A stretch of 64,000 nt of DNA from Lytechinus pictus (taxonomy: Eukaryota). Position 1 is the first letter of the stretch; every line of letters starts with the position of its first letter. The stretch spans positions 1,054,001 to 1,118,000 of the forward strand of contig NC_087248.1 in assembly GCF_037042905.1 (NCBI RefSeq). The letters run 5' to 3'. This document shows, one piece after another, positions 17,001 through 51,920 of this stretch. Under the pieces are notes generated by a model that was given only the letters and a program-made list of their open reading frames with translations, was not told where the DNA came from and searched no databases. A program made the translations under genes and the position numbers.

Positions 17001-20000
17001 AGACACTTGTCTTATGGCCCACTGCAATGATGCCAGAGACATCATGAAAGAACTGCATGTGTGAAATTGATGTCATTGTGTTTGATGGCATTCTGGACAG
17101 CTGTATCTTGGCATTGCTATTGTCAGCAAGTTGTTGATTGTAGAGACTAAAGACAGAAAATGCTTTGGAAGCCACTTTTGTACGGGCACATTGCAATGAT
17201 GCAAGAGACATGAAAGAACTGCATGTGTGAAATTGATTTCATTGTGTTTGATGGCATCCTGGACAGCTGTATCTTGGCATTGCTGTTGTCAGCAATTTGT
17301 TGATTGTAGAGACTAAAGACAGAAAATGCATTTGAATCCGCATTTGTACCACTTCACAATGGGCCCACTTTTCAGGATATGCAATAATGCGAGAGACATC
17401 ATGCAACAACTGAAACCACCCATGTGTGAAATTGTTACAGGGTGTTTGAGGAGATTCAAGACAGCCATATTCGGGTATTTCTAGAAATACAACACCCGGT
17501 TTGAAAATTGTATACACACATTAAAAAGTGGTCCTTAACTTTTTTTGAGTAGTGTATTTGCGATTGAGATCAGCTAGTCTTTTCCTTATATTTTTCTTCT
17601 TTCATGGTATATTTTTATGAAGCAGTGTGAGATACTGAGATTATGTATTAGGGGTTCATGTTGATAAATTCATTCTGACTGCTTTCACTTCTCTTCTCAG
17701 GTCATGGGAGTGGAACGCCTTCACTAGATGATGTTCTTCAGATGGTTGGTGTGCCCACATCATTGTCCCTCAAATATGGGCAAGGTTATTCCACCTACCA
17801 ACACAATGGAACAGTCCCAGCGTCCACATACCCTACGACATCCAATTACAGTGGAGCTTATGTAGACAGTAATGCCAACATTGCTTCTGGGAGTGAGGCT
17901 AGAGGGTATGCAAAACCAACACAATCTGCACTCCAATCTGTTGCAAAGCAAGGAAGGACAGATTCACGGACCAGTTTGATTGAACAAGAGATTGCAGAGC
18001 AGCAACAGAAGCTGATTGAGCAACAGCAGAGGACGTTACAGGAGTTCAGTCAAGCCATTCAACATGAAGCGAGTAAAGCGGGTAGTGAAAGTGGTCTTCA
18101 CCGGAGTGAAAGCTTGTCAAGTGTTGATAGTCTTGAAGAACATCGTAGAGAAAGAGAAGATTTGACCCAGAACTATGGGACCAAACACCAGAGGGCTCAT
18201 GCAACTTCAAGTTATGAAAATATCAATGGTGTGCACGTTTCCAATGGCCCTGGGGTTGGGCAGAATTCTGAAGTGAAGAAAGATCTCAGTAACTACAGTT
18301 TATATCACAATAATGTTTTGATGAGAGGTAGCAATGATAAACAGACTCAAGGTGGCCAAGAGACTAAGCAGTCAACTAGAACTACTTTGAATATCAAGAA
18401 TGATTCGGTTTATGATGGCATTCAGCCTAAAGGGGTTGCTTTTAATGGAATCACACAAACAGCCACTGCTTCTGCACACAACGCCACCAATGGTACACTG
18501 AATGGTACTGCAGTTAGGTCACAGAATGGTAAAACTGAAAAGACCACTACTGGTAATGGAACTTATCAAGAGAAAAATGGTACAGCTCATGCTTGGTCGA
18601 ATTCCAAAGCCAGTAAACCCCCTATTCAGCAACATGTCAGTGCACCAACAGCAAGCACTAGTCAAAGATCTAGGCCATATTCAGCAAGGACCACAGCAAC
18701 CGTAGTTACTGTTGCTCCAGCTGTATCATATCCAGCAAGAACTCAAGAAGCTGAGCAGTCAAATGCTTCCGCTAGAGGAACTGATGCCTATGGAGGAATG
18801 AGTTCTGTGATGCCATATCCCCCTCAAGATAAAAGGTTTGAGGAAACTCCTCAACAAACAATTGCACGTGAGGACATCACACTAGAAGAGGAGGAAGAGC
18901 CAGAAGTTGTGTCACCTCCTAAGAGTATCTTAAAACGGCACAAGAGTGAGACCCCTACCAAAGATCGTAAAGCAAAAGGACTGGCAGCTGCAATCATGAA
19001 GGACAGCCTTGATATTGGCAAACAGAGCGGAATCAAATCCCCAAAGAAAGGTGTTCGTTGGACAGATTTGACCTACAGCGATGATGAGAGCGTAGAGACA
19101 CAGGCAGCAGCTGAAAATGCGACACCTGTTCGCAAACCAAGGATCATATCAAGTGTTGATGCAAGGACTGTACAAGAGAGGTTAGGTGGTAAGACGGACA
19201 GTGTTGTTTCAGGCATTCCACCAAGACCGAAGTCTGGAAATGCTAATGGCTCAAAAGGAAAAAGCATGCAATTGAAAAATAATCGCTTCCCAACTGGTAC
19301 TGAAAGTAAACAGAATGTTGTTGATAATGATAGGGCTGCTGCAGGGAAAGCACCTGTCATTCAGAATGGAGTAAGATTAGACAAGACGCCCACGGATGAT
19401 GAAATCAATTGGTTATGGGATAAGGTTAGGACATGCTTGAATACACGAGAAGATGGGACAGACCAGAAGAATGGGCATGTTCCACAGACACCTAACACAA
19501 GGCAGTCATCCAGTACAAACCCACACCAAGATCAGAGGATAACAGCAAATCTTCGAGTGGCCCCACCATCCAACAATCCACGGTTCAGCCAGTACAATGA
19601 TACACTCAGAAGACAGGTCATAGTCCCTCGTTACAGGACTAACAGTGATTCTGGAACCCATGTCCAGCAGACGCCTGTATCTCAGCAACGGCGCCCTCAT
19701 GTGAGGAGTTCCAGTGCATCTAGGACTAATGGACAGCGTGGACCAGAGCCTAGCCAACAAGGACCAGGAAGATCTGCTACTGTGGCTCAGCAATATAGTA
19801 CACCAGGCAGTAAGTTCACACTGTTTATTTCCCCACCATAATGTAGAAGTGATATTAATAATAATATTCCGCATTTATATAGCATTTATAGATATTGCAT
19901 ATAAGTGGATGTACAAAAGTAATACTGCACATTATATGTGATGAAATTTGAGTGTACATTTACATGGTCACATTTACAATTCTGTGGAGACTCCATCATT

Positions 20001-34374: not shown

Positions 34375-37300
34375 TTATGATGCGACAGCTGCTTGTGATT
34401 GAGGCGATGATTGCAGAGATTGTTGATGTAGTCTGACGTTCGCAGGATCATAAAACGGCTGAGAGAAATCATAATGGGCATCATTGAAAACACCATGCAT
34501 TCTTCGTCTGCGGGGGAAACAAAATAAAGAAAACAAATGATTTAGTATGGTTTCCATGGTTTCATTCATCTTACCTTGATTGATTTGAGATTAAAAAATC
34601 AGTTTAATCTAATTACAAAATTCAACTACCATATTTTTTAAAAATTAATCTAAGAAACACAATATTACCAAATAAAATATAAAAACTCAATATAACAAAA
34701 TGGTTAGGATCATAAAGAATCCATTATCTAGTAGCATGTATAAGCAAGGTCATACAATATACAAAAAAACAAAATGAAAATACAATGACAGTATTTTGCA
34801 AACAGAGATTTATGTAGTGATTGATATATGACGTCATACAGGAAAATAATAATCGAGATTCCCCTTTTATTTTTTATTCTTGACATGAAATAAATTTGAA
34901 ACCTAGTGAAATTGCATGCCTTGAGTAATTCCTCCACAGATATGCGGTATAATGAATTCCTATAGATATATTTATTACCTAAACTTAGGATTATATCATA
35001 ATAAATGAGACCAGAAATTAAGGGGAGTTATCACCATCCTCTACAACTGTTGCTTTCTAAGTTAGATTAATGATTTGAATGCATATCTTACCTGCTTGCT
35101 AGTCTGACAGGGCTTTCTATATCATGTAGAGGCATGGCCAACCATGTAGCACACTCGGTACCATGACGACCAAGCGGTACCAGCGGGAGCGGGGGCAAGC
35201 GGTGGCGCTCTACTGCTTTGTCCGGTAAAACTTCACCTAGATGGAGTTAAAAAGGGAAATGATCTTAGAAATCTAAACGAAGTGTGATTAATGCAAAAGG
35301 TAGTATGTCATTGAACAACATTAGAAGAAATACCAAATCACTCTCCATTAAGACTTTCTATCTATTTGACATGATCATCTATATAAGGCAATTTTTTCAG
35401 TTTCTGATTTAGCAATTAAAACAATGTTTGATGCTTCAAAAAAAAATGTACACAAATAAATAGCCATGAAATTGATAAAAGGCAACAAATAATATTGCAA
35501 TATTATACAAATCTTAAAAATTTGTTGAATATGACACCCCCTTCCCCCAGTACTTGTACAAAAGCCATCCTCATAGGGTTCTCAATCTAAGGGGAGTCAA
35601 CTTTTCAAATGATATACAAGGCTTCAAAATTATTACTGTGTGCATCATATTAAATTTATTCATTGAATTAAAGTCCTACTGACACTCACCTGTTTGGCAA
35701 GCTAGGGTAGTCCTGTCCTCATTATTCCTCTCTCGTTCCTGTTGCAATGTTGGGTCCTCTTGGGTGTTTCTATGGATCTTAAGAGGAGCTGGTCTAGGAA
35801 CTACAAGCTTCATAGGATCATACTCCTGTGTGTCATAGGTATCTAGAAATACAAAACCCTGTCAACAGAAGAGAAACATGTAAGTCAATAGAATACCACT
35901 GTTACACAGAAATCATGGAAATATACATGTACCTTTTAACTGCACATTAAAAAAAAATTGACATTCAGAGGTCATTTAACAGAGTTTCTATTAAAAATTG
36001 TCCAAATTAATATATTGTATTCATTTCCATGACAAGAACCTTTTCATTTTTTAGAATAAAAAAATCAATATTGAGTTTCCTTCTGATAAGAAATGCCTAT
36101 CTATCTTAATTTGAGGGCAGGAGAATCGGGAGGTAGGGAGAAAATGATATTATAAAATGTCATCTATATTCTTTTTGCTAATTTTCCTTGCATATCATAC
36201 AAAGATTTGACTTGTAAGATTGATCCCCTACTGCTATTGCATCACACTGTATAAATTTTGGTTTGGCTTACTGTTACACATAGTATAATTCTAAAAAATA
36301 AGTGGGATCAAACACAATGGCCCAAATTCAAAATGGTACTTCTTTTAACCATCAGTTGAACCCATTTTTTATGCAGATTTCCTGTATAAATTACGCTTAT
36401 TTTACCGCGTATATTAAAATCATGTCCAATGCTGATGCACACTTTTCTCACAGTGAGCCAAATTGATGCCTGTTGCCGTGGTTATCCATGCTATTTTTTA
36501 TCATGAATCCACTCTTTTGAATTAACGAGTGTACTCTTTAAGCAGTGGACTCATTAATAAAATTGCGTACTTAACCATTGCAACAGGCGTCACTTTGGCG
36601 CACTGTGACAAAAGCGCGCATCAGCATTGGGCATTTTTTTAATATACGCGGTAAATAAGCGTAATTTATACAGGAAATTTTCATAAACCATGGATTCAAC
36701 CGATGGTTAAAAAAAACACCTTTATGAATTTGGGCCTATATCTCCATACATTTGTAATAATTTGAAGAACTAAATGAAGGAGAGTATATCTTAATTTTTC
36801 TGTTAACAAATTGCAAATAATTAGTGTGGAATCAATCATGATGTAACAAATGACAGTTTCTTTTGAACTGTGACTCACAGCTTCTCAATCATCTTACTTC
36901 TGCATCATCAGCCTGATAATAATATTTCATGAGCAAACAATGGACATGTGATTCTTCTTACCTTTTTATTGCCATGCCTGAGGTATTCCTTATATATACT
37001 TCTTTTCCTCTTATCCACCTTAGGGTAGTTCTTCATCTCTTTATATATACTGCTATCTATTGGCTCCCAAATCTTCTCACTCCATTTCTTATAAAGCATC
37101 TCCTTCTTACGCAGGTCAAGAAAATCTTTGTTCATCAAGTAGTTGTCTACATCCTGTCAAAAAAATACATCAAAGCTTTGAAAAATGATAATCAAATACA
37201 TAAATATTTCTGGTTTTAAAAGAAGAAGTAACGAGATATCCAAAATAGTAACAATATCACAAGTTTTATGATCAGTTTTTGGTTAGTGGTAAAGGCAAAG

Positions 37301-39024
37301 TATGCAATCTATAATACGTTATTCTAAATGATGGCACAATATGAAAATAATTCAAATAACAAGAATGATACAAATAGTCTAACTAATATTTATCTGCAAA
37401 AATAAATAATTTTATCACTTGAGGGTATATAATCAGTTTCAGGATAAGGGTTTACTAGCAATGTCTGATTAAAAAAGCAAAAAATGTTTAGTCGCTCATA
37501 ATACTTACTTTGACAAATGTTTTCTCTGTATTTAAAACTCCCATATACATCTTCTTGGTTTCTTTTGATTCTGGATCTGCTTTCTCCTGTGGATGGAGAA
37601 AAAAAAATACTTTAAATAATAAACAAGAAAACAGACAATTATTTGGTCTTTTTGCAACAGAAACAACAACACATTTAAATGAATTTAATATCCCATGCAG
37701 AATGGATAATGATCACTTGACAATTTGAAACAAAAAGCAAAGTGTCTAATGTCTACATTAGAAGTATAAAACTGAAAAAATGCAATTAACATTATTGATT
37801 TATCACCATGGCAACCTCTCCGCTCTCCCACAATTCCATGTGATAGTGGGAAACAATATTTGCACAATGGAACTTCTTCTATATATTTCAATTAGGGCTT
37901 AAAGCACAATGTGTTTATCACATCTACCACACAACCAAGAATCTATAAGCAAATACCACAAGTTGAATGAGAGCTAATTAGTTATCTTGAGATACACACC
38001 AAGATTATAAGGTGTGTACAATAATTGTACTTTATACTTTATCTTCTCTACTCAGTTCTCAGTAGATGTACAGTATTCACTGCCCTTTATTTTTGTTTCT
38101 TTCATGGACATGAACATAATTTTTTTCTTTTCTATCAAACTACTCTCTGAGTTCCTCAACCATATACAGTGTAGTAGTTCCCTTTTATTCTTTTACTTTA
38201 TGTTCTATTTCATTTTCTATTTCTTTCCTGTTTCTTTAAAAAAATTAAACTATTATAGCAATAATTTTCAAACATAATTGTTTTTTCTGTCTATTTTCTG
38301 TAAGTCTATCCATCAAATCACCCTTTCCCCCTCTCTATTTCTCTCCCTTACTTTCTTCCACAAACATTAAAAATGTAAGAAATCAAATTTTTCCCTTCGA
38401 TATATAGGGTTCCTGTCCATGTTTTTTCCAAATAGCAATCCCTCCTGCTCATTATCTTACGTCAATGGCCATATAATGAAATATGTTCTATTTCATTTTC
38501 TATTTCTTTCCTGTTTCTTTAAAAAAATTAAACTATTATAGCAATAATTTTCAAAACATAATTGTTTTTTCTGTCTATTTTCTGTAAGTCTATCCATCAA
38601 ATCACCCTTTCCCCCTCTCTATTTATAATAATAATAATACTTTTCTTATATAGCGCATAATAAACTGTACGTTTCTCTATGCGCTTTACAATAAAGGTTA
38701 CAAAGTAAACATGCTACAAACAAAGAAAATAGACTTGTGAATTACAGAATTACTTAATATTTAAACTTACAATTATTATCTATAAAATAAATACCTATAC
38801 TACACCTAGTTATGGGTTTCGGAAAAGATGGGTTTTGAGTAAGGATTTGAAAGTTGAATAAGTGGATGCCTGTCTGATATGTAGGGGTAAGGGGTAACAG
38901 AAATACAACAATAAGATTGTATCGATGTTGGTGCAACAAAAGAAACCACATGTGCTATGAATATTTTTGAGTATATAAAGGTTAAGTAATCAGCCTAAAT
39001 ACTCAAGTTTTCACTTGTTAAGAC

Positions 39025-39074
<50 letters not shown>

Positions 39075-41280
39075 GGATAGATAAATTATTTTTAATTAAG
39101 TAATTTATTATTCAATCAATAAAGAAAAAGGACAACAAAACAGCATATGACATTTTTTCTTTAAAGATTGAGACGTTGTTGAAATTTTTGTCTCCATATT
39201 TGGCTATGTGCTGCAACAACCATTATCAATTACCTCAATAGTCGCAAAATGGAATACATTGTTACATGTACAATAATATTCACTCTAAATTAAATTTTCT
39301 CATAAAAATAAAGCTTTTGTTCAATTAGGCCAAAAATAAATATCTAGTTTGTAGCCCATGATTATGGATGTAATATTGATTTAAGTTCAGTAATATTACA
39401 GTAATATTCCTATGGATATGGAATAATGAAAGTAATCAGTATAGCATTTTTAAACAATGTCACATTTCCTGATAATTACTGGCGACCATGAAAGCATCTC
39501 AACATTTAAATTGAAGAGATATAACCATTATGCATTATAATATAATAAAAACTCAAGATTGAACGCATCCCTAGTCACACTCTATAGAATCTCCTTTTCT
39601 TTACCTAGGCTAGAGCTAGGATTATATTCAAGAGAAAGGAAAATTGAACGCTCATCCTTTTTTTTTTGGGGGGGTGGAGTTGTTTTGTAAGTGTTCTTGA
39701 AACCATGGTGATCTCAGAAACAGTTGGCCCTTCATGTATAGAAGTTCCCTGTCCATTTTAAATCCAATAGGTACACATTGGTATCCCACATGTAATTGTA
39801 TTCCCTTCTAAACAAATAAATAGCATTGTACTCTTCTTTTCAAGTGAACAAATACTCTTACTCCTGAATGACTTGAAGTGATAACAGATACATCTAGCGT
39901 GACTTAATACCATTAGAATATCCCTGTAAAATGTGTGAGTCTATTTGTTAAGAAGTGAGAAAATATACACATTCAGATAAACATGGATGAATAAATTCCC
40001 TTTTACAATCATTCCATACTCAAGATCTCATACAAGCAAAATAAATTCCGTCTTTTAGGGAGGACTTTCCCTAAAATATTATATGAATTTAATAGTATTA
40101 CCAGCATTTAAAAAATTAAATACTAAAAAGCTTACTTGTTCCCTGACGACCCCCCCCCCCCCCCGACACCAGGGGACATAATATTTCTTACACACTTTTT
40201 ATATTGCCTTATTTTTCATATCTTCTTTTTTCTTTTTCTGGAGAAGTTTAGAGGGGTGGAGGGTGCCACCCCTAGATATCTGCTTCTGCCTAAACAGCAC
40301 CATTTTTTAACCAACCTGTACATGTCTGACAGCTTTCTGGCATAACCAGTTCTGTATCTTAGCCGTTTGATCTAGAGCTGATCCAGTGCTTCCTGCTGAC
40401 ATCATACTGGTTCTACTAGCTAGGGGTGTACTCCAAGGACGCTGAGGAGATGAACAGGATGGTTCCGTTTGCTCTGGTAATTCTTCTAGTTTCCTCCTCC
40501 ATGTGTGTCTTTTAGTGAACTGCATAGTAAACAAAATATAGGATGTAAAATAAAGGATATGTCATTCCATTAATTGAATAGAGCATATTTCAATGCTGGT
40601 GAATCATGATGCAAAAAAAATCATGACGGTAAAAATGAACAAATATAGTGATAATAATGATGAAAAATATAATAAGAATTATCATAATTTTCATCATTAT
40701 CATCATTATATCATCATCATCACAATCACCACCATCATCGCCAATATCACCACCATCGCCAATATCTTCACCATCATCATCATCATCACTATATATGTAC
40801 TATCATCATCACCATCATCATCATATCGTCATCATCATTAGAATTAAAATGAAGGATATACACCGCATGTAATTGATGATGGTGATGAATATCTTTTTTT
40901 TTTAGTATGTTGATAATTAATGATTATAATAATCAAGCATTATAATGATAACAGAATAATAATAATAATGATAACAAATAATAATAATAATAATAACAAG
41001 AACAATAACAACAACAACCTATAGGCCTAGAACTTAGGCAAAACTTACAGGCACAATTTAAACTTATCAATGTATTTCCATAGTCAATGTCACTGATTAA
41101 TCAATACATAGAGCGAGGCCTACGACTATTTTGTACAGCCAGGCCATTCCACGCCCACATTGTTATACATACCAATTTCTGGGTATCATTTTCGCGTGCA
41201 TCGTCAAGTAATATCTCCCTCACTTCTGGAGAATGAATTCTAACATTTTCCAATCTATCTCTAGATCGTAGACCCTGCAT
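34375..41280 (-). CDS. FAM228B: FAM228-family protein (FAM228B-like), 342 aa, 7 coding exons
   Basis: Phase-consistent exons 41280-41173, 40519-40316, 37586-37509, 37153-36962, 35858-35690, 35236-35092, 34507-34375 (TAA), total 1029 nt. Core recalled as FAM228-like: LNTEKTFVKDVDNYLMNKDFLDLRKKEMLYKKWSEKIWEPI...YKEYLRHGNKKGFVFLDTYDTQEYDP...EDP...WLAMPLHDIESPVRLASRRR. A vs B paralogue assignment cannot be resolved by eye. Confidence 0.85.
36319..36736. mobile_element. Palindromic MITE, same family as 20172-20589
   Basis: GGCCCAAATTCA...TGAATTTGGGCC termini; arms match the 20 kb copy. Confidence 0.8.
38627..38860 (-). mobile_element. L2-like LINE 3' remnant flanking a ~140-bp local duplication (38202-38340 / 38483-38625)
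   Basis: (AAT)n tail plus TATATAGCGC...GCGCTTTACA terminal hairpin. Confidence 0.5.
39027..39082 (+). repeat. (GATA)n microsatellite
   Basis: About 14 tandem GATA units with one variant. Confidence 0.95.
40680..40840 (+). repeat. (CAT)n microsatellite
   Basis: Degenerate CAT/CAC triplets. Confidence 0.85.
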
Positions 41281-41399
41281 CGCACTTTCTTGGTGTTGTG
41301 CTTCTTAATCTCTAAAATTAACAACGTTCTTATTCCTCCATTTTAATCCAATAAATAGTATAATTCCAGATATGATCGAATAGCGAATATATATGTTTG

Positions 41400-41890
41400 C
41401 GGTGATGTGTGTCTTTCACTCAATCAACCGCACCGATCGTATTGTTGATTCTCGTTCCCTCACAACAAACACATGCTTCCGCGGTATCAATGGAGACGTG
41501 ACTCGGCCTATTGTTGCGCGGTTTGTTCCACGATTTCGTAAAGTTAAAATAACATTTTCCTGCAAATATACAATTGTAGGGATAAATACTTTCACATCAT
41601 ATTTTCTAACCTTTTTCTCGAAGTTTTTCACAAAATTTGAACAATTCACTCTATATATTTGCAATAATAAACGAAGTTTTAATTCGAACTATATTTCTTG
41701 CCCAATAATACCAATGAACTTTTCCCAAACTTTTCGCGTATAGTCTAGTCTCTATGGAAATGACCCAGAATGACCTCGGGTCACCAGTTGACCCTTACGT
41801 TATTATCGCATATTGTAAACACGATCAAGAAAAGAAAATCTGAAGTTCTGAATCTCCTGATTGTTGTATGATTAGCTGAAATACGTAAGT
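41400..41890. promoter_or_regulatory. Putative bidirectional promoter for FAM228B (-) and PFN4 (+)
   Basis: CpG-enriched patch. Minus-strand acceptor at 41312-41313 just before the FAM228B ATG exon; strong plus-strand donor AC|GTAAGT at 41885, consistent with a non-coding PFN4 first exon; X-box-like GTTCCCTCACAAC at 41454-41466. Confidence 0.5.
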
Positions 41891-42500
41891 TTTTTTTCTT
41901 CATACATTTTACATGTTCCATCATAATTCGATTCAGCACCCCATCCATGCAATAGTTGCCGCTGAGAATTGGGGAATTTCGACGATCATGATAGACATGA
42001 ATGCAGCTTATTGACTCCGGGTTCCAGGCGGGCTGCGCTATTGCGCTAGGCGGGTGGATCGGGGTACTTTGTTATTCCGTGCCCGCTCAGCTCAGGTGTA
42101 CGTGGGTTGTACAGTGACAGTGTAGATAAGTACCAAATGTATATACTTGTATATGAATATGTTATTATATCCTTTTTCTATGTCTTTTTGTTATTCATTT
42201 GTTCAACAGTATTATCTTTTGCATTCAAGGCTTTCATCACCTTTTTTTGCCATCTTGTTATAGCTTTTTATATTTATCCATGTTTTGTTATGTAGGCCTC
42301 ACTCACACGTATTGCGAGGTTAGTATTAGTATACTAACCTCGCACCACGAACCGCCTTTGGCAGTGGATTTCTAACTAGTGGGTCGCGCGTGCTGGGATC
42401 TCACTTCTTTGGTCCACAACACACGACTTCTATGGCTTGAATTTTCTGTGCGCGGCGGCATGTAATGAACCCTTGGGTGTGTAGGCCTATACGTATTTAT

Positions 42501-43025
42501 GTATGATGGGGGGACCTAAAGCTACGCACTTTGTTTACAAACGATAAAAACTCTGCCGATTTTTATATTCTATCAAACCATCTTTCACAAATTTGTGTTA
42601 AATATTGTAAAGATTCATAACCAAAAAGAAAATATCACAAAACTCACTAATACGAAAATCCCGCCGTGTTTTCCGAACACCTCTTGATTTCGCCGCCCGA
42701 TGTAGAAGGGGTCCTAAAGCTATGCACTCAATTTATCATGCAAAGAAAAAGTATTTCCTGTGCCTTAACTTCTAAATAATGTTCATATTCTTATAGGAAA
42801 ATATGAAATCAAACTGAATATAACTCCAAAATTCCAAACAGTTGCTGGTTTTCTCTGTATTTAGCGATTTATTGCAGCCTCTGTAGAAGAAAATGAATAG
42901 GAATCGTTCGTCACACTGCAGTCACTAGCTCCACACAGAGTGCGCATTTTGCAATTGAAATTGCATGCGCATTGGAATGGTGCGTAGCTTTAGGACCCGC
43001 GTAGCTTTAGGGCCCCCTACCATAC
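42501..43025. mobile_element. MITE with ~27-bp TIRs
   Basis: GTATGATGGGGGGACCTAAAGCTACGC pairs with GCGTAGCTTTAGGGCCCCCTACCATAC. Confidence 0.75.
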
Positions 43026-46000
43026 GTATGCATACTATGTATGAATTTGATGTACATGTATGTATAACTATGTATATTCTCATACTCCGAAAGGGGTCGA
43101 CAGATTAAAGTTTCAGTTCAGTTCAGTCAGTAGTTCCTGCCTAGCTGCCGAATGTTATGACCTAATTATGTTGAATAATAATAAGATTAAGAAGGAGAGG
43201 AGGAGCTACACTAGAGCCTAGCTAGGCTCTGTCCTAAGTTACCGTACTTTAGACAGCTGCCAGTCGTCTGTTTCGAGAATAGAAGAGTTTTTTCATTTTA
43301 ATATTTTAAATTTTTTCTCTCTTTGACTTTGTACAGACGGCATGCAATCGTGCAGCTGCCATTAGGGGGTTAACAATGCAAATTCCCCCCGACGGGGCTC
43401 ATCTATTTTTGTCTTTATTTCATAAAAAATATATAAAAAGAACTGGACCAAAATAAAGACTAGATCTAGTATCATCTATATGTGGTCGCATTTCATAAGA
43501 CGGCAAAAAGGGTGGTGGATAAACAAATTTCCATGCAGTGCTGTGGATAAATTGTAAGTTGGCTACATCACAGCCCCATGGCCAAATTTGTTGTGTAGTG
43601 TAAGGTCTCATTTTGAAGCTAGAACTATAGGCTAAATATATTACTATATAGTATAAATTAGATCAATACAATATCAGCAACAAAAACTAGAGTCTACAGC
43701 ACATTAAGTTTGAAGTTACAGGGGTGGCGGAGCCGGTGGATGCGAAAAATGATAAAAATGGGGGTCCCCTCCGCGGCACATACCCACTATGCATTATATA
43801 CTGAGTGCCCCCCCCCCCTCCTAGCCATGCATGTTCCAACTTACCCCGTATATGGGGTAAGTTTGAACGCTTGCGATGGTCTTGTTCGAAGTGGATTTTT
43901 TCAGTAACCATCATAGAGTTAAAAATTTTATGGGGTACATTTGAAGCCTTTAGATATATGCTTTAAGCTGATATTGATTGTTTCTTGAATAAATTCTATG
44001 TGGATTTTACAGCCATTTTTGTCGAAAATGTTCCAACTAACCCCAATCTCCCCTACAACTTAAATACTTCATCACTTAGTTCAAACTTGTACTCCATGAC
44101 TCCGTCTTTCTTTGTACGTGGGCAGCGCAAGATGGCGGGCGGCCACCGGTCTTCTTGCAAAGCTGTGCCACTACATAAACAAGACTTAATAATAATAATA
44201 ATGTTAATGATAATAATAATTTCATAACTTCATCTATTTATTTTGTGCTTAGTTGCTTGCTTTCTTTACTTGTAGGTAAAGTACTTTCGTTATTCAGTCA
44301 TTATTCAATTATCAATTAGTGTGTGATTCCATCTCCAGCCCTTGTACAGAACACCAATCTGTATTAAGACTGAAGATGACCCTCCTTATCTCTCCTTTGA
44401 TTCTCAAAGATCTGAAGAAGCCAATTTACATTGCCATCATTGACACAGTGTTGAGTCAACTTAAGATGACAATGAAATGCTTTTAGCACATGGAAGGAAG
44501 CAAACATTTAGACTTTTCATGAGAAACAAATAATGATTTTCACCAGCTACTGTTAGCAACTACAAATCTGTTGATCTCATTTAATTAATCAGTGAAAATC
44601 ACTGACAATAGAAATGTTCTCAGTATAATGAATTCTGAAAAACAACACAAGATCTTAGTTTGCCTTTGTTACAAACTGCTGCACATGAAATTTTAAAGAA
44701 GAAACTTCTTAAAACAGTATCATTGCTAAAACAGAACGTGACAATAACTATCCACATGATTCTTAAACATGGTAAAAGCTGAGATGAAACAAGCAAATAT
44801 TTGAATTGTGCATCCTGGGAAAAACCAATCATTATACATGTAGTTGCATCAAATGAAATATGGTGATCTAAATGTGTGTGCCATTTTTTACTTCATGTAC
44901 ATTATGATTTTATTGTGTCTTTGTGGGTTTTTTTAATGCTTTTTATTTTCACAAGAAGGGCTGCTTCATGTGCTGTATTTCTATTTATTTGTTTGAATTT
45001 GTTTATTAGGGGGGGGGGGGACTTGTACCAATCAGTTTTATTAGAAGTGTCAAATGCTCAGAATGCACCCTCTACTGAATATTAAGCGGAATTGCTCAGT
45101 TCTAAATTGTCAAAAATGTAGATTCACTTAATATTAGCAGAAATTAGAAATGCGAGGTACATGTAGATAACATTACAGCTATACTGTATTAGTATCTGGG
45201 ACATGGGGGTAGATCCTCTATGTTTTGATACACCCAAGGGGTCTATAAATGGAGCAAATGGTATTAATTTATTATCAAAATTATCTGATTTTATTTAGTT
45301 GTATCTTCTTCTTTTTTTCAGTAGTGAACATTACATTGCAATTATTAATTTTGGATGTTCTGCTGTTTGTTTGACCTGCTAATAAAACTGCCCCAACCCA
45401 TTGGATTATCTTCTTGTTATGAAGTAAGAGTTGAAATGGTTAGTGTTCCATGAAGCACACAAAGTATAGAGCAAAGCAGAATCCTTCATCTGTACATGTA
45501 AGTCCCAAACTTAAAAGTAATTTTTGTTCACAATAGATGTGAGTTATAGCCTGTGGTTATTATTAGGAGCATTACAATGGGTAGTACAAATCTGGTATGA
45601 TTAAAGCCCTAGGGTTCTGTGTAGGATAAAGGTATAGAGGGGGATAGGATTAGTCAGAGATCTGTAAGGCAAAAATCCTGATTAAACTTTCTTCCAATTC
45701 TCCTTGAAATCTATTTCATTTTGTCCTCCAATTGTCTCATTTATACTTGTAGAGTAAATACATTTGTTCCCAAGGATTGAGACCTATCAGAAAGGAATAC
45801 ATGTATATCTCTAAATTGTATTATATCCCTAGGCAAAGACTTCATCAAGTAATATGTACTTTGAAGAATTATTGTTCGGTAGTACCGGCATAGAGAAATG
45901 TATTGTAAAGCACTCTCACTGGAGAGAAAACTTTAAGATCTCATTTGGCAAAGGGATTTTGATAAATTAGTTCTTGGAGCATTTTGTCTCCACAAACAAG

Positions 46001-46321
46001 AATTCAATCTGATGTCAGCATTAAGCGATGTACATGGCCTTAATATAGAGCTCTACCGTATGCCTAAATTGCTAGATGTTCATGTATGCAGGATCTTTGA
46101 AAAGGAAGCATTTTGGAAATTCATGCATTTTTTTACTGGAATGTCGTGCCATACATGCGAGTTCTAATTTGAAGAGTTGAGGTGAAAGTATTATTTTGAA
46201 ACAAGGAATTATAATGTCTATGGAGCGTGATAAAGGAGAAGACGTGATACCTGAACATCCAGATCTTAAGTGGCTTGATTCTTCATTACCGGTAATATAC
46301 TGTAAATATAATTGTAATATA

Positions 46322-46906
46322 CCATGTGAGTCAACAAAAAACTTGACACTTCACAAATCCCCACTTAAAGAGTATGTTCTCCCAAATAATTTTGATACCA
46401 TATTTATGTGGTATGTGGTAACGCTTAGATGACCAGGAGGTATTCTTTGCAGTGATGTAAATTTTGATTTGTACCAAATTAATTCATGACTGCAATAATG
46501 AATCTAGATGTCAATGATGACATAATTCTACAAGGATTGCATTAAATTCATTTCAAAGCCCCTTTTAAGTAACTTACATTATTTTTTGTTTTAAAAATAA
46601 ACACATTTTAGTATCAATTCTCAAGTTAATTTCATTGAAATTGGATTTATATGTTTAATAACTCATGAAGGATTTTGACATCTGGATTCATTCATTGCAG
46701 TCATGCCTTACTTTAGCGCAAGTCAAAATTTACATCACTGTAAAGAATACCTACTGATTATCCAAGTGTGAAGACAAACCACATAAATATAGTATCAATT
46801 TTTTGGGAAGATCTTTAAAGCCATATAAAATAATTATGTGTTCATCACATATTTTTTCCTTAAATTGGGGATTTGTGAGGTGTCAATTTTTTTTTTTTAC
46901 TCACGG
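46322..46906. mobile_element. Palindromic MITE (uninterrupted copy of the 57293-59310 family)
   Basis: CCATGTGAGT..AAAAAACTTGACACTTCACAAATCCCC pairs with GGGGATTTGTGAGGTGTCAATTTTT..ACTCACGG. Confidence 0.75.
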
Positions 46907-47502
46907 TTGTTTCATTTAATTCATTCACCTACGAAAACACATTTGTTTGCAAGATTCAAGCACAAATTATATATATTTTCTTTTAAGATATGATCAATAA
47001 ACACACAACAAAAAATGGGAGAGGATGCAATATAAAAGCATATTGGCTTATCCCCCAAGGAAATAAAATGTGATTTGAGCGTGAAAGATGACCGAGAGGG
47101 GGATAAAAACAATACATGTTTAGACAAAAATTGAAAGTGTTTTTAGATTCTTATGAAATTTTTAATGAATAGTAATACTGAGGTCTCACAATAGCTGTTT
47201 TGAAATATATATTAACTTGTTGTGAATTTGTGGCATTACATCTGTATATAATACCAACAGTATTGTATAAAATTCATTTTAGAATTTTGGTTCTTAAACA
47301 GTATAATATCTACCAAATGACTTTATTCTTTAGAATTTTATTTAATGTATTATTCATCACAAAATTTCTATATCCTAGATTTTCATTCTTATAATGTTCA
47401 TGGAATGCTTGTACTCAAAATTAATATCTCATCTAGTATTCTACATGTACATGTAGTTTAAAAAATAGAAGAAAACAATGTGTAATTTTTGTGCATTGGC
47501 CT

Positions 47503-48154
47503 CCCGGAGGGGCCACTTCCATTGATGAGTGGATACCATGCGCGACCACGGGGTCTTGAAAAGCACCCTAAACACGTATTTTCCATATTCTGAAAATGCA
47601 CCCCTTAACAAGTATTGGCGTGTGAAACCCTACCCTTAACAAGTATTGAAAACAAATACTATTGGCAAGTATTCACAGAATTGAGCCCCTAAACAATTAA
47701 GTACAGCGATGTATTTTCCATATTCTGAAAATGCACCCCTTAACAAGTATTGGAAACAAAACGGTACTCTTGGCAAGTATTCCCTGAAATGAACCCCTAA
47801 ACAAGTACAGCGATATTTTATTGTTATTTCACGGGTCCGTTGGTCGTCGGTTTTACCTTTACACACCATTATTTCTACACCTCGCGCAAATCGGACTCTA
47901 AACACGTAGTGTTGGGGCAAAAAAGACATCCTTTATAAAACATTTTGATTTTGTTTTATCATCTCCGCATATTTGACCCTAAACACGTATATTTTTCCGA
48001 GCGAAATAGATACCCTTTTTTCAATATTTTTGTGTTTTTGACACCCTTATCACGTTACGTACGTAACGTGCCTTATCTTGAAAAAGACATCCTTTTTACG
48101 TGTTTTTTTGGTCGCGCATAGTATCCACTCGTCAATGTAAGTGGCCCCCCCGGG
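47503..48154. mobile_element. MITE with perfect 8-bp TSD (hAT/P-type)
   Basis: TSD ATTGGCCT at 47495-47502 and 48155-48162. TIR CCCGGAGGGGCCACTTCCATTGATGAGTGGATACCATGCGCGACC. Internal ACCCTAAAC/CCCTTAACAAGTA sub-repeats. Confidence 0.88.
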
Positions 48155-49388
48155 ATTGGCCTATAAAGTCTGTTGCACATGATAACCAAACTTCAAATTA
48201 ATGTTTGATCATTCAATTCTTAATATAATTTTCTTAATGGCAAATATGGATGAAGAAAAAAAGGAAACTTTCAAAGTCTTTTTAACTGGATTAAAAACAT
48301 TTCCCACTCGTAGCTCTTTGGTAAATATATAAATCTTTAATTCTCTTTGATGTAGCTTCTCAAACCTTGTCAATAGAGTGTGCTCTTACACTCAATAGAC
48401 CTTTAGAAATCAATCCTGCATTGATATTTCTTTGAACAGTGAGTGCTAGTAGAACCACCCACACAATGACCTATTGAACCAAGCTATCTCCATGCAACCC
48501 CAAACAATTGAACGCTCCCTTGTAATTCTATAGCTCTGTGAGAACGTTAATCACTCCATGGTTGTAGAGTGTATGTACCAAGCCTGTGGCTGATATGGAT
48601 TGAATGTATTCTCTTGGCTATTTGGGGGTGATCTGAAAGAGAAAAATGGTGGATAAAAAATCTTATGATCAGTTGGATAAGATTGAAGAATTAGTGAAGC
48701 TTGTCATTAATCATGTGGACCCAGACGTACCTCATCGACCTGCGCAGGTATATATGATTGTAAAGCTGTATGTTTGTTGTATCCTCGGTATGTGTACACA
48801 GTACACTCATTGAACGTATTTGAGGTTGTGTGTGAACATTCCATTTACTGTCATGTATTGTAGGAATGTTCATGCTCATGTATATGTACAGTAATTGCCA
48901 TTAAACAATGTACAATGCTTGAGAATTCAGCAACATAAAGACTTTCAAACAATACAAGCTAAATGCTAGTATTATTCATACATATGACTGGAGTTTATTT
49001 AGCCTACATTCTTCTTCCCTTAAAAATCATTTGCTTCAGCAGCGCAGAATAATTGATATCAATTATAATATTTGATGAAATACGTATGTATTATGTATCT
49101 ATAACTCAAATTTGATGACAACATACCGTATATGTACTGTACATCTACATGTATATAATTTATATTTGACCTTCCTCTCTTTTTCCCATTGTCATTGCTT
49201 TATGATCATATTTTCTTTAACACTTTCTCTTATTTTTACCTTTTTAAAATTCATCCTCATACTGAAACGGTTTGATCCCCTCTTTTTCTCCAGATCTATG
49301 TTTTATTCCTTATTTGATTCATATACATGTATGTCAGGATATTTTTATGATTGTAAAATTGACTAAATTGTTTTTACTAAGAAAAGTA

Positions 49389-49841
49389 CCCCGGGGGGGG
49401 GGGGGGGGGCCAGTCAAATATATTTCGGTACACACGCGTGACCAAGAAATTTTCAAACACCCCCTAAATGAGTTTTTCTCTGTGTGCAAAATAACCCCCT
49501 AAACAAGTTTTTTGCGGGCTTTATTTACACATTTTGGCCCCTAAACAAGATGTCGCCACAATATGACCTCGGAGAAAAAGCTTGGGAAAAAAACATACCC
49601 TAAACACGTTTGGCTAGTCTTAAAAAAAAGCTTTGGGGAAAAAAACATACCCTAAATACGTTTGACCCCGCGATTGACCATTGACCAGTCTTTCAAAACC
49701 ATCCTTTTTCTTGAAAATCTGTGTTTTTGATACCCTTAACGAGTCCACGCGCGGGCCGCGTACAAAACTGAAAAAACACCCCTTTAAACACGTTTTTGGG
49801 GTCACGCATGTGTACAGAAATATATTTGACTGGCCCCCCCG
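49389..49841. mobile_element. MITE related to 47503-48154
   Basis: G-run-CCAGTCAAATATATTTCGGTACACACGCGTGACC pairs with GGTCACGCATGTGTACAGAAATATATTTGACTGGCCCCCC. Confidence 0.8.
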
Positions 49842-49936
49842 TAATGAATAGGAAATCGATACTGAATTTAATTCTCTCCTCTATCTTTATCTCCCTCCTC
49901 CACCCCCCCCTGTCTCCTCTACAGGATCGTGTTAAG

Positions 49937-51920
49937 ATGAATCAGCTTCAGAATCTCCTCCATGATGCTTTGATAGCTACAGGTCATGTAGAGAACTGTG
50001 CTATCATTAGAAGAAAAGATATCTCTCTCAGAGCAAGCTCAGCTGGATTCACAGTATGTCCTACTTTCTTTCCTTTGATCTTTTTAATTTTAATAATTCT
50101 TTATGGGTATATTGATTATCAAATATAATCATGATACATTGATAATTATATTAAATAAAATTAATGAAAGAAAAAGGTGTCCCAAAATAGCCTCAAAGGC
50201 TTGATAAAGGGGAAACCACAAATAAAGCAAACAAAAATGATTCACAAATAGAGCAGAGAACCATAATGTATTGCCAAGAAAAGCTATGGATTTAAAGTAA
50301 TTTTTTATTATAAAAAAAAGGTGATTTTCGGATTTTATAAATAAGCTTCTTTTTCACCATTCTGTGTTTTGTCTTTAAGTGCTTTACTAACCACCTTATA
50401 TCATATTCCTATAGCTCACAGGAGATGAGATGCAGAAGATGATAGATGCATTCAAAGACCCTCCCAGAACAAGATTAGAAGGTCTATACTTCCATAATAG
50501 ACTATACAAGTGTGTCAGGGCAGACAAGAACTCCATCTATGCTAAATGTGTAAGTTTAGACAATCAAAACAGAAAACTGTTTTATAGAGATATCCAGTAC
50601 ATAAATAAGTAATGTAGAAATATACTCTGTATTTGAATAGGTAGTTAGACAAATATACTTTTAAAAGGGTTAGTTATTATTAATAGGTCATCCCTTTTTA
50701 CATGTGTAGGTAAGGACTTGTTGTCAACACTTTCACTTCTTTTTAATCACCCCACCCCTTATTAACTTATTTTTGTCTCGCCTGCAAAGCAAAGCGAGAC
50801 TATAGGCGCCGCTTTTCCGACAACATTGAAATTTTAACCATGGATAAGTTTTTGAAATGTCATCATAACTTAGAAAGTATATAGACCTAGTTCATGAAAC
50901 TTGGACATAAGGGGAATCAAGTATTACTGAACATCCTGCCCGAGTTTCAGGTCACATGACCAAGATCAAAGGTCATTAACAGTTCATCTTATCATAAAGA
51001 CTACTACTGTTAGACCAAGTGGATACTAGATGAAGTGGGTATTAAAGCATTGATGGAAATTAAGACAAAATTAAAAATGTTCTTAAATAGCAGTTAGACC
51101 AAACGGTTAGTAGATGACTTGTATACACACCAGGATTAGACTATGTGGCAGTTTATCGTGTTATTTAATTTAATTTTTTTTTTACAGGATAAAGATGGTA
51201 TCGTGCTAGTGAAGACTGCTACTCTAGTTATCATGGGAACATACTCGGACAATATGTTTCCAAGCGTGTGCGTGGAAGCCATTGAAAAACTAGGTGAGTT
51301 CACACTGCTTCACTTATACATCAGTTAATTATGATTATCTTTAATCACCATGTATTAAGTTGTATCAACTGTTCTGATTTTGATAAACTTTTGTTTCCTA
51401 GAACATTGATTGCTAGATAAAGTCATGTAATTTCTAGTTAGAGTTTGTTTGAAGAAAAAAAATGCATTTGGAAAATATAGTATAATAGTGGAATATTAGT
51501 CTGAACATTTACCTTATTGGCTTATTGATTACATGAAGTGTGAATTTTTGGGACAATACTTACGATAGCATCTTGATCTATCACAAACATTCAGTAATAT
51601 TGTGATATATTTTATTCAGCACCTTATTGAGGTACATGCAGTTGGAAAGTATTATAGAACTATTATTTATATTAATTTTGGGGGAAAGTGAGAGTAAGAG
51701 TTCTTGAAATAACTTTTAACATACTGTTTTTGGACCTGAAAAGAACCTCTCAAACTCTACATTTATTCATAATGTGAGGTGAGTGGGAATGTTCATCATG
51801 GCTGTAGCATATATTGAGTGTTGTACATTAATTTAGAATTCCTGTTTCATTGATATCTTTTTTCTTTTCCTTATTTTCCCCCATACCACAGCATCATACT
51901 TCATAGAGAAGAGCAAATGA
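49937..51920 (+). CDS. PFN4: Profilin-4, 128 aa, 4 coding exons
   Basis: Exons 49937-50053, 50415-50549, 51188-51293, 51892-51920 (387 nt): MNQLQNLLHDALIATGHVENCAIIRRKDISLRASSAGFTLTGDEMQKMIDAFKDPPRTRLEGLYFHNRLYKCVRADKNSIYAKCDKDGIVLVKTATLVIMGTYSDNMFPSVCVEAIEKLASYFIEKSK. Matches recalled PFN4 signatures (EGLYF..Y.CVRAD..S.YAK; M.PS.CVEA.E.L) and lacks the N-terminal W..Y of canonical profilins. Confidence 0.93.
50770..50980 (+). mobile_element. Truncated HINE-like element in a PFN4 intron
   Basis: TTTTTGTCTCGC...GCGAGAC 5' IR followed by GAAACTTGG...GGTCACATGACC.AGATCAAAGGTCA. Confidence 0.5.

What the first reader, a model, noticed from the sequence alone, without database searches (positions are those of the whole stretch)
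34375..51920. Head-to-head FAM228B-PFN4 pair: candidate ancient co-regulated module
Seen: FAM228B-like (-) and PFN4 (+) diverge from a CpG-enriched patch at ~41.4-41.9 kb, with no other gene detected between them despite many TE insertions. Recalled knowledge: human PFN4 and FAM228B are adjacent and divergent on 2p23.3. PFN4 is an atypical, testis-enriched profilin linked to spermiogenesis; FAM228B is essentially uncharacterised. Inference: if this is an echinoderm, the arrangement has persisted since the deuterostome ancestor. That would point to a shared promoter and possibly a joint cilia/sperm function, and give a functional lead for FAM228.
Basis: partly seen in the sequence, partly recalled or inferred. 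Interest (0 to 1): 0.72.

Follow-up and report, generated by a model that had tools for sequence, protein, structure and literature searches.

The report
Ancient head-to-head FAM228–PFN4 gene pair
This sea-urchin window holds a sperm/cilia central-apparatus gene (FAM228) and the atypical profilin PFN4 back to back, an arrangement I also found in a sponge, an anemone, a worm, a brachiopod and a mammal, so it dates to the first animals, although whether the two still share one promoter in the urchin is not proven.

Summary
An intact 342-aa FAM228 gene lies on the minus strand (CDS 41280 to 34375). The single-copy PFN4 orthologue lies on the plus strand (CDS 48646 to 51920) and is 100% identical to Lytechinus pictus profilin-4-like X1. 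They diverge around a single-copy, CpG-rich patch (41.3-41.9 kb) conserved in Strongylocentrotus.

It is head-to-head in a sponge (51 bp between start codons), an anemone (518 bp), Capitella, Lingula, three echinoids and a rodent.

FAM228B is no longer uncharacterised. Cryo-ET places it on the C2 microtubule of the sperm central apparatus, as the homologue of Chlamydomonas FAP239.

A shared promoter in the urchin is only partly supported:
- PFN4's coding first exons lie 4.9 kb (1a) and 7.4 kb (1b) from the FAM228 ATG, separated by transposon insertions.
- RNA reads show exon 1b is transcribed and are compatible with its own start near 48.5 kb.
- RNA data also imply a further 5' exon outside 44.1-49.9 kb.
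- The patch carries a plus-strand splice donor at 41885 conserved in three urchins, a candidate non-coding PFN4 exon.

Class: a new (or unlisted) member of the known conserved divergent gene pairs. Co-expression and protein binding remain untested.

The parts
34375..41280 (-). FAM228 (FAM228B/FAP239-family) gene, CDS span. Seven coding exons: 41280-41173, 40519-40316, 37586-37509, 37153-36962, 35858-35690, 35236-35092, 34507-34375. Intact 342-aa product.
   Evidence: tblastn with holothurian, oyster, Lingula, Capitella and Exaiptasia FAM228B proteins. Spliced model with GT-AG borders and no stops. Single copy in the genome.
41281..41900 (.). Single-copy, CpG-rich, conserved intergenic patch directly upstream of the FAM228 ATG. 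This is the FAM228 promoter region and the candidate bidirectional promoter.
   Evidence: CpG o/e 1.38 against 0.56 for the window. Unique in the genome. Blocks 41145-41545 and 41685-41783 are about 76% identical to S. purpuratus.
41459..41493 (.). 35-nt block identical in L. pictus, L. variegatus and S. purpuratus (CTCACAACAAACACATGCTTCCGCGGTATCAATGG). It contains a forkhead-like TGTTTGT on the minus strand.
   Evidence: Alignment A1; motif scan. The transcription-factor assignment is inference only.
41748..41761 (+). X-box-like (RFX-type) motif GTCTCTATGGAAAT, one mismatch to GTHNYYATRRNAAC, identical in three urchins.
   Evidence: The motif is not enriched in the window (16 found, 16.4 expected), so only its conservation speaks for it.
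41728..41884 (+). Candidate non-coding PFN4 exon 0. The 5' end is a guess from the 157 unplaced nt of an RNA contig. The 3' end is set by the conserved donor tac|GTAAGT at 41885.
   Evidence: Donor conserved in L. variegatus and S. purpuratus. An in-frame TAG lies before the junction, so the ORF would start at ATG 49937, as in the 128-aa isoforms P0173 and P0174. RNA runs cover exon 2 without 1a or 1b. Not directly observed.
42499..43025 (.). Young 527-bp interspersed repeat inside the CpG-rich zone.
   Evidence: About 3950 candidate copies in the genome, up to 99% identical.
43830..44057 (.). 228-bp multi-copy repeat carrying a strong plus-strand donor at 43857 (ggg|GTAAGT). This is the rival site for the unplaced PFN4 5' exon.
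46214..46291 (+). PFN4 alternative coding first exon 1a (MSMERDKGEDVIPEHPDLKWLDSSLP), donor ccg|GTAATA.
   Evidence: 92% identical to S. purpuratus isoform X2. 93% DNA identity to S. purpuratus. No reads in the three raw RNA runs.
47492..48166 (.). L. pictus-specific insertion of an expressed multi-copy repeat. It accounts for the second CpG peak (o/e 1.52).
   Evidence: Absent from the L. variegatus alignment. Reads are 95-99% alike, on both strands, with loose ends at 47503/47509 and 48151/48154.
48351..48645 (+). Conserved flank upstream of exon 1b. Likely an internal PFN4 promoter and 5' UTR.
   Evidence: 72% identity to S. purpuratus over 48351-48841. Stranded reads in run X23 appear only from the 48500-48699 bin (depth 6, none in the bin upstream). 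An RNA contig spans 48355-48725.
48646..48747 (+). PFN4 coding exon 1b (N-terminal extension MVDKKSYDQLDKIEELVKLVINHVDPDVPHRPAQ).
   Evidence: 100% identical to P0170 and P0003.
49925..51920 (+). PFN4 core exons 2-5: 49925-50053 (core ATG at 49937), 50415-50549, 51188-51293, 51892-51920 including the stop.
   Evidence: Pfam Profilin hits on three exons. Exact translation to P0170. A spliced RNA contig piece ends exactly at 49925 and 50053.

Best explanation
The region holds two single-copy genes arranged 5'-to-5'.

**The two genes.** One is the urchin FAM228 gene. It belongs to the FAM228B/FAP239 family, whose mouse and Chlamydomonas members are structural proteins on the outer surface of the C2 microtubule of the ciliary and sperm central apparatus. 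The other is the urchin orthologue of PFN4, a profilin that does not bind actin and is needed for the manchette, acrosome and flagellum in mouse spermatids.

**Age of the pair.** The divergent pairing is ancestral to animals. It is found in a homoscleromorph sponge, an anemone, an annelid, a brachiopod, echinoids and a rodent. In the sponge and the anemone the start codons are only 51 and 518 bp apart. The ancestral state was therefore most likely one bidirectional promoter driving both genes in cells that build motile cilia or flagella.

**What changed in echinoids.** The spacer has been stretched to 4.9-8.4 kb (start codon to start codon) by transposon insertions and by two alternative coding first exons, 1a and 1b. 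These add an N-terminal extension to PFN4.

**How it most likely works now (inferred, about 60%).** The conserved single-copy patch at 41.3-41.9 kb drives FAM228 leftwards. It also drives a non-coding PFN4 exon 0 rightwards, ending at 41884 and spliced to exon 2, which gives the 128-aa isoform. A second, internal PFN4 promoter near 48.4-48.6 kb gives the 166-aa isoform.

**Shown versus inferred.** Shown: gene models, orthology, copy number, cross-phylum adjacency and orientation, transposon content, transcription of exons 1b and 2. Inferred: use of exon 0, RFX/forkhead control, co-expression.

**Confidence.** The figure given (0.7) is for the whole statement. The ancient divergent pair alone I put at about 0.95, and a still-shared promoter in the urchin at about 0.6.
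For: Gene models and identity:
- establish both gene models.
- PFN4 orthology: every named hit is profilin-4, vertebrate PFN4s are 48-59% identical, and the urchin's own canonical profilin is only 22% identical.
- FAM228 identity: the exon 4 region finds 111 relatives, named FAM228B in sea cucumber, oyster, Lingula and Exaiptasia.
- The sea-cucumber homologue matches PDB 9ijj chain q 'Protein FAM228B' at E 4e-29 and Chlamydomonas FAP239 (7n61/7som) at E 6e-6.
- Both genes are single copy.

Head-to-head adjacency, from gene calls with Pfam PF28229/PF00235 and confirmed by tblastn:
- L. variegatus and S. purpuratus
- Exaiptasia, 518 bp
- Lingula
- Erethizon, 1.5 kb
- Corticium, 51 bp
- Capitella

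The patch:
- CpG o/e 1.38, unique in the genome.
- Blocks conserved with S. purpuratus, including a 35-nt perfect block, an X-box-like site and a plus-strand GTAAG donor at 41885.

RNA:
- Exon 2 is covered in X22 (depth 5) with no reads on 1a or 1b.
- Contig record 8 of X1 (depth 38) has 157 nt 5' of exon 2. The binned X1 depths (1.8 at 46100-46299, 2.2 at 48700-48899) are fully explained by low-depth contigs, which excludes exons 1a and 1b as the source.
- Exon 1b is transcribed on the plus strand in X23.

Other:
- The anemone spacer holds a perfect palindromic X-box. My estimate of the chance expectation is about 0.003.
- Function: PMC12297659, bioRxiv 10.1101/2024.08.06.606614, bioRxiv 10.1101/2022.01.23.477438, PMC9481974.
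Against: - No read or contig was laid on 41.0-44.1 kb. The single read-laying run covered 44100-50099, so exon 0 and the FAM228 start are not observed.
- The donor at 41885 has a weak exon side (tac|GTAAGT). A stronger donor exists at 43857 inside a repeat.
- The splice joint 48747>49925 was not among the 15 joints listed (29 others were not shown), so the share of each first exon is uncertain.
- The X-box-like motif is not enriched in the window. No X-box within one mismatch was found in the rodent spacer.
- In Branchiostoma belcheri no FAM228 lies within 10 kb upstream of PFN4.
The linkage can therefore be lost.
- Co-expression was not measured.
- The human arrangement is recalled, not checked here. 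A rodent was checked instead.
Confidence: 0.7

Rival explanations
1. Independent promoters. In the urchin the 41.3-41.9 kb patch serves FAM228 only. PFN4 is transcribed solely from its own promoters: exon 1b near 48.5 kb, exon 1a near 46 kb, or a repeat-derived exon ending at 43856. The genes stay neighbours because of shared distal enhancers or chromatin domain, or simply because no break has happened there.
For: Exon 1b has a conserved 295-bp upstream flank. Stranded coverage appears only from the 48500-48699 bin. The coding first exons lie 4.9-7.4 kb from the FAM228 ATG. There is a strong donor at 43857. Spacers of 4-8 kb are also seen in Capitella, Lingula and other echinoids.
Against: The conserved plus-strand donor at 41885 and the conserved block 41685-41783 have no obvious role for a minus-strand gene. 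RNA shows a PFN4 5' exon that is neither 1a nor 1b. The 43857 donor lies in a multi-copy repeat and is not conserved with S. purpuratus, which nevertheless has the same 128-aa isoform. Retention with the same orientation from sponge to mammal is hard to explain without a cis constraint.
Confidence: 0.3
2. The two proteins are physical partners. For example, PFN4 could be an assembly factor for, or an unassigned component near, the FAM228B site on the C2 microtubule. Selection for balanced dosage would then keep the genes on one promoter.
For: The evidence is circumstantial. The pair is deeply conserved. Both knock-out and structural data point to sperm microtubule structures.
Against: PFN4 is not mentioned in the main text of either mouse sperm central-apparatus paper, nor profilin in the Chlamydomonas and Trypanosoma ones. 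No PDB axoneme entry matches PFN4. Mouse PFN4 is reported at the acrosome-acroplaxome-manchette complex.
Confidence: 0.12
3. Chance neighbours, or mis-assigned orthology. On this view the profilin or the FAM228-like gene is a paralogue, and the resemblance to the human 2p23.3 arrangement is coincidental.
For: None found. The genome does hold three other profilin loci.
Against: Only this locus matches PFN4. Identity is 48-59% to vertebrate PFN4 and 22% to the canonical urchin profilin. FAM228 is single copy. The same two families are adjacent and divergent in seven further species from six phyla.
Confidence: 0.02

Closest known systems
Conserved ancestral microsyntenic pairs (CAMPs) of the co-regulated 5'-5' type, such as HSPD1-HSPE1 (Irimia et al. 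2012, PMC3514665)
   Same: Two unrelated genes are kept adjacent and divergent across animal phyla. The spacer is very short in some lineages (51 bp in the sponge, 518 bp in the anemone), which is the signature of a bidirectional promoter.
   Different: I could not check whether PFN4-FAM228B is in that paper's list, because its supplements are not held. In echinoids, the annelid and the brachiopod the spacer is 4-8 kb, and extra PFN4 first exons have been added. Co-expression has not been measured.
Mammalian PFN4-FAM228B locus (human 2p23.3 from recall; checked here in the rodent Erethizon dorsatum)
   Same: Same two gene families and same divergent orientation. There are 1.5 kb between the coding starts in the rodent.
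   Different: Vertebrates have two FAM228 paralogues (A and B) and a 128-129-aa PFN4 without an N-terminal extension. The urchin has one FAM228 and PFN4 isoforms of 128, about 154 and 166 aa from alternative first exons.
FAP239/FAM228B, an outer-surface protein of the central-apparatus C2 microtubule (PDB 7n61/7som and 9ijj)
   Same: The urchin FAM228 shares the conserved core (LDLRKKEMLxKKW ... NKKGxVFLDT ... PLVPLGRHGT) that aligns to both solved proteins through its sea-cucumber homologue.
   Different: Location and function in the urchin are inferred by homology only.
RFX/FOXJ1-controlled motile-cilia gene promoters
   Same: The anemone spacer holds a perfect X-box. The urchin patch holds a conserved X-box-like site and forkhead-like sites.
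   Different: Motif matches only. They are not statistically enriched in the urchin window, there are no binding or perturbation data, and none was found in the rodent spacer.

Membership tests
Profilin-4 (PFN4) orthologue group | Profilin fold (Pfam PF00235) across the 128-aa core | tested here: met
   Three core exons each hit PF00235 over the cut-off. PDB profilins match at E 1e-17 and weaker.
Profilin-4 (PFN4) orthologue group | Closer to PFN4 of other animals than to canonical profilins; single orthologue in the genome | tested here: met
   All named hits are profilin-4. Vertebrate PFN4s are 48-59% identical. Identity to the urchin's own canonical profilin is 22%. Only this locus matches PFN4. 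No formal tree was built.
Profilin-4 (PFN4) orthologue group | Shared exon structure of the core (breaks near residues 40, 84 and 122) | tested here: met
   tblastn pieces break at the same residues in urchins, Lingula, Exaiptasia, Corticium and Branchiostoma.
Profilin-4 (PFN4) orthologue group | Loss of actin and poly-proline binding; testis or spermatid expression | not tested
   Known for mouse PFN4 (PMC9481974). Residues and tissue expression were not examined for the urchin. The tissue of the RNA runs is unknown.
FAM228 (FAM228A/B, FAP239) family | Sequence membership (Pfam PF28229 or significant similarity to FAM228B) | tested here: met
   The exon 4 ORF finds 111 relatives, named FAM228B where named. 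PF28229 is recorded on the orthologous gene calls of L. variegatus and S. purpuratus. The local Pfam copy lacks PF28229.
FAM228 (FAM228A/B, FAP239) family | Homology to the solved central-apparatus proteins FAM228B (mouse) and FAP239 (Chlamydomonas) | tested here: met
   Sea-cucumber homologue P0057 matches 9ijj_q at E 4e-29 and 7n61/7som FAP239 at E 6e-6. The window exons are 48-75% identical to P0057. The link is therefore one step removed.
FAM228 (FAM228A/B, FAP239) family | Binding to the C2 microtubule at the base of the C2a projection | not testable with these tools
   Known from cryo-ET of mouse sperm and cryo-EM of Chlamydomonas.
Conserved ancestral microsyntenic pair (co-regulated type) | Orthologues adjacent in several distant phyla with conserved 5'-5' orientation | tested here: met
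   Porifera, Cnidaria, Annelida, Brachiopoda, Echinodermata (three species) and Mammalia. Not within 10 kb in Branchiostoma belcheri.
Conserved ancestral microsyntenic pair (co-regulated type) | Correlated expression of the two genes | not tested
   The one read-laying run covered only the PFN4 5' region.
Bidirectional promoter (opposite-strand starts less than 1 kb apart) | Two transcription starts within 1 kb on opposite strands | tested here: inconclusive
   Implied by a coding-start spacing of 51 bp (sponge) and 518 bp (anemone). In the urchin the coding starts are 4.9-7.4 kb apart. A conserved donor at 41885 suggests a non-coding PFN4 exon about 450-600 bp from the FAM228 ATG, but no reads were laid there.

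The most novel reading that the evidence does not exclude
PFN4 is not a cytoskeletal profilin but part of the same ancient motile-cilium and sperm-flagellum module as the central-apparatus protein FAM228B/FAP239. The two have been held on one RFX-type bidirectional promoter since the first animals because they act together, for example if PFN4 helps deliver or assemble C2-microtubule components. The urchin's extra first exons would then be a later overlay on that ancestral promoter.
Probability: 0.2. Interest if true: 0.75.

Novelty: new member of a known kind. Interest (0 to 1): 0.55.

Why it matters
Gene order is almost completely scrambled between sponges and mammals. A divergent pair that survives in at least six phyla, with only 51 to about 500 bp between start codons in the earliest-branching ones, is one of the rare cases where position itself seems to be under selection.

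The pairing gives a testable hypothesis for PFN4, whose molecular job is still unknown although its loss makes male mice infertile. It may belong to the motile-cilium and flagellum programme and may be controlled together with a central-apparatus component.

The urchin locus also shows how such a promoter can be pulled apart by transposons and new first exons without the pair being broken.

Tried and rejected
- **Pfam scan of the FAM228 exons:** blank. The local library lacks PF28229, so this says nothing.
- **Transcript look-ups:** exact look-ups of the L. pictus and S. purpuratus PFN4 isoforms P0170, P0173, P0174 and of amphioxus P0014 found nothing on record. No transcript contig with the 5' UTR could be fetched.
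- **Second CpG peak (47.8-48.2 kb) as a PFN4 promoter:** rejected. It is an expressed multi-copy repeat inserted only in L. pictus.
- **X-box consensus scan of the window:** 16 hits against 16.4 expected. The urchin motif has no statistical weight on its own.
- **Structure-based test of FAM228 with PFN4 (Lingula pair):** no verdict. Scores were 0.35, 0.09 and 0.18 against a mark of 0.34, and the controls were not run. This is neither support nor evidence against binding.
- **Literature:** no paper in the held library discusses PFN4 and FAM228B as a pair. The two co-mentions are livestock and dog GWAS gene lists. The supplements of Irimia et al. 2012 are not held, so prior listing cannot be excluded.
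- **Chance adjacency or paralogy:** considered and rejected.

Full report
**What is in the window**

The window is G000:C4:1054001-1118000 of an 812-Mb echinoid assembly. The PFN4 exons translate with no difference to Lytechinus pictus profilin-4-like isoform X1 (P0170).

On the plus strand the PFN4 coding exons are 48646-48747 (exon 1b), 49925-50053, 50415-50549, 51188-51293 and 51892-51920. All have GT-AG borders. An alternative coding first exon, 1a (46214-46291), matches the N-terminus of S. purpuratus isoform X2 and L. variegatus isoform X1. Three core exons hit Pfam Profilin.

On the minus strand, seven exons between 41280 and 34375 give an intact 342-aa protein. That is the length of the L. 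variegatus gene call carrying PF28229.

**Orthology**

With the 128-aa core as query, every named hit is profilin-4. The hits run from echinoderms (91-99% in echinoids, about 71-80% in the other classes) through hemichordates, amphioxus, molluscs, annelids, brachiopods, cnidarians and a sponge to vertebrates (48-59%).

The genome has three other profilin loci. The full-length canonical one is only 22% identical to the urchin PFN4. Only this locus matches PFN4.

The FAM228 exon 4 ORF finds 111 relatives in an exhaustive HMMER search. Where a source names them, they are FAM228B or FAM228A. The gene is single copy. A sea-cucumber homologue, to which the window exons are 48-75% identical, matches PDB 9ijj chain q 'Protein FAM228B' at E 4e-29 and Chlamydomonas FAP239 (7n61/7som) at E 6e-6.

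**What is known about the two proteins**

FAM228B is no longer uncharacterised. In-cell cryo-ET of mouse sperm places it among the outer-surface proteins of the C2 microtubule. There it forms, with KIF9, CFAP20 and SPAG16, the base on which CFAP65 of the C2a projection sits. It is the homologue of Chlamydomonas FAP239, which inserts a helix and a loop between protofilaments 10 and 11 (PMC12297659; bioRxiv 10.1101/2024.08.06.606614; bioRxiv 10.1101/2022.01.23.477438).

PFN4 lacks the actin and poly-proline binding sites. Knock-out mice are infertile, with malformed manchette, acrosome and flagella and reduced motility (PMC9481974). PFN4 does not appear in the main text of the two mouse central-apparatus papers, nor does profilin in the Chlamydomonas and Trypanosoma ones, and it matches no PDB axoneme entry.

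**Microsynteny**

I fetched the locus around one of the two genes in other species. I read the recorded gene calls and confirmed both genes and their strands by tblastn.

| Species | Phylum | Distance between coding starts |
|---|---|---|
| Corticium candelabrum | Porifera | 51 bp |
| Exaiptasia diaphana | Cnidaria | 518 bp |
| Erethizon dorsatum | Mammalia | 1.5 kb |
| Capitella teleta | Annelida | 4.1 kb |
| Lingula anatina | Brachiopoda | 5.6 kb |
| L. variegatus | Echinodermata | 6.4 kb |
| S. purpuratus | Echinodermata | 8.4 kb |
| This window | Echinodermata | 4.9 kb (exon 1a), 7.4 kb (exon 1b) |

All are head-to-head.

Contig lengths suggest that the two genes also share a contig in the snails Candidula and Babylonia. 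They lie on different contigs in Dimorphilus and Styela. In Branchiostoma belcheri no FAM228 lies within 10 kb upstream of PFN4.

The pair is therefore ancestral to animals and has been lost or stretched in some lines.

**The spacer in the urchin**

CpG observed/expected is 1.38 at 41401-41800 against 0.56 for the window.

Only 41281-42110 is single copy. Its conservation with S. purpuratus is confined to 41145-41545 and 41685-41783. The three-urchin alignment shows four features:
- a 35-nt perfectly conserved block (41459-41493), with a forkhead-like TGTTTGT on the minus strand;
- a conserved X-box-like site, GTCTCTATGGAAAT (41748-41761);
- a conserved TTTTCGCGT;
- about 100 bp further on, a plus-strand splice donor conserved in all three species (L. 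pictus tac|GTAAGT at 41885; S. purpuratus tag|GTAAGC).

The rest of the spacer is largely transposon-derived:
- a 527-bp repeat with about 4000 candidate copies (42499-43025);
- a 228-bp repeat (43830-44057);
- a repeat at about 46.3-46.9 kb;
- two L. pictus-specific insertions (47492-48166 and 49390-49842).

The second CpG peak, at 47.8-48.2 kb, is one of these insertions. Reads on it are 95-99% alike, come from both strands and have loose ends at its borders.

**RNA evidence**

- Exon 2 is covered on the strand expected for a plus-strand RNA, at depth 10.8, 5.1 and 1.2 in X23, X22 and X21.
- Exon 1b is covered only in X23 (depth 6 in the 48500-48699 bin, none in the bin upstream).
- Exon 1a has no reads in any raw run.

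In X22, exon 2 is therefore expressed without 1a or 1b.

Contig record 8 of X1 (842 nt, depth 38) places exon 2 at its positions 158-286, with borders exactly at 49925 and 50053. The binned X1 depths at 46100-46299 (1.8) and 48700-48899 (2.2) are fully accounted for by separate low-depth contigs. Its first 157 nt therefore come from neither 1a nor 1b.

A major PFN4 5' exon thus lies outside 44.1-49.9 kb or inside a repeat. This fits the 128-aa isoforms annotated in L. pictus and S. purpuratus, which begin at the exon 2 ATG. An exon ending at 41884 would put an in-frame TAG four codons before the junction, which gives exactly that ORF.

The rival site is the strong donor at 43857. It lies in a multi-copy repeat that does not align with S. 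purpuratus.

I put about 60% on a PFN4 start inside the patch. That would place it within roughly 450-600 bp of the FAM228 ATG. It is not shown.

Separately, exon 1b has a 295-bp conserved upstream flank (48351-48645) and a contig spanning 48355-48725. An internal promoter near 48.4-48.6 kb is therefore likely real.

**Regulatory motifs**

The anemone spacer contains a perfect palindromic X-box (GTTGCCATAGGAAC, L004:9886-9899). By my own estimate the chance expectation is about 0.003 for 518 bp.

The urchin site has one mismatch. It is conserved in three species but is not enriched in the window (16 found, 16.4 expected). No site within one mismatch was found in the rodent spacer. RFX/forkhead control is therefore a lead, not a finding.

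**Comparison with what is known, and novelty**

The finding belongs to the known class of conserved ancestral microsyntenic pairs of the co-regulated 5'-5' type (Irimia et al. 2012, PMC3514665). I found no paper that discusses this pair. I could not read that paper's supplementary list.

I rate it a new member of a known kind. Its value is as a functional lead for PFN4 rather than for FAM228.

**Not done or without result**

- Co-expression was not measured.
- The human locus was not examined. A rodent stands in for the recalled 2p23.3 arrangement.
- The fold-based binding test gave no verdict and is reported only under Tried and rejected.

Noticed in passing
window 48646-48747 and 46214-46291: PFN4 has two alternative coding first exons, both conserved between Lytechinus and Strongylocentrotus. 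Exon 1b encodes an extension (LDKIEELVKLVINHVDP...) conserved in echinoids, a crinoid and a sea star, but not alignable outside echinoderms. It looks like an amphipathic helix. Other invertebrate PFN4s carry unrelated extensions, and only the D-x-V-K-M stretch just before the core Met is shared.
   Followed up: partly
L004:9886-9899 (Exaiptasia diaphana): A perfect palindromic RFX X-box (GTTGCCATAGGAAC) lies in the 518-bp spacer between PFN4 and FAM228, about 100 bp upstream of the FAM228 ATG.
   Followed up: partly
L005:21112-24261 and L009:17017-19447: A 297-aa cyclophilin-type (Pro_isomerase) gene follows FAM228 on the same strand in both Lingula and Capitella. This may be a third member of the conserved block in lophotrochozoans.
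   Followed up: no
window 47503-48155 and 49300-49900: Multi-copy repeats with high RNA depth on both strands (up to about 150x in 6% of each run). Both insertions are absent from L. variegatus, so they are recent.
   Followed up: partly
window 5699-8749 (-): Uninterrupted 1016-aa ORF with endonuclease and reverse-transcriptase domains: an apparently intact LINE-type retrotransposon.
   Followed up: no
window 15916-17211 (-): 431-aa ORF with HTH_Tnp_Tc3_2 and DDE_3 domains: a Tc1/mariner-type transposase that looks intact.
   Followed up: no
window 17742-19841 (+): A 699-aa open frame with no Pfam hit in a GC-richer stretch. It lies just upstream of the place another note of this scan calls CEP126.
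   Followed up: no
L002:21289-26869 (L. variegatus): The next gene downstream of PFN4 in L. variegatus is a Cys-loop ligand-gated ion channel (Neur_chan_LBD/memb). I did not check whether it is also in the window beyond 52 kb.
   Followed up: no
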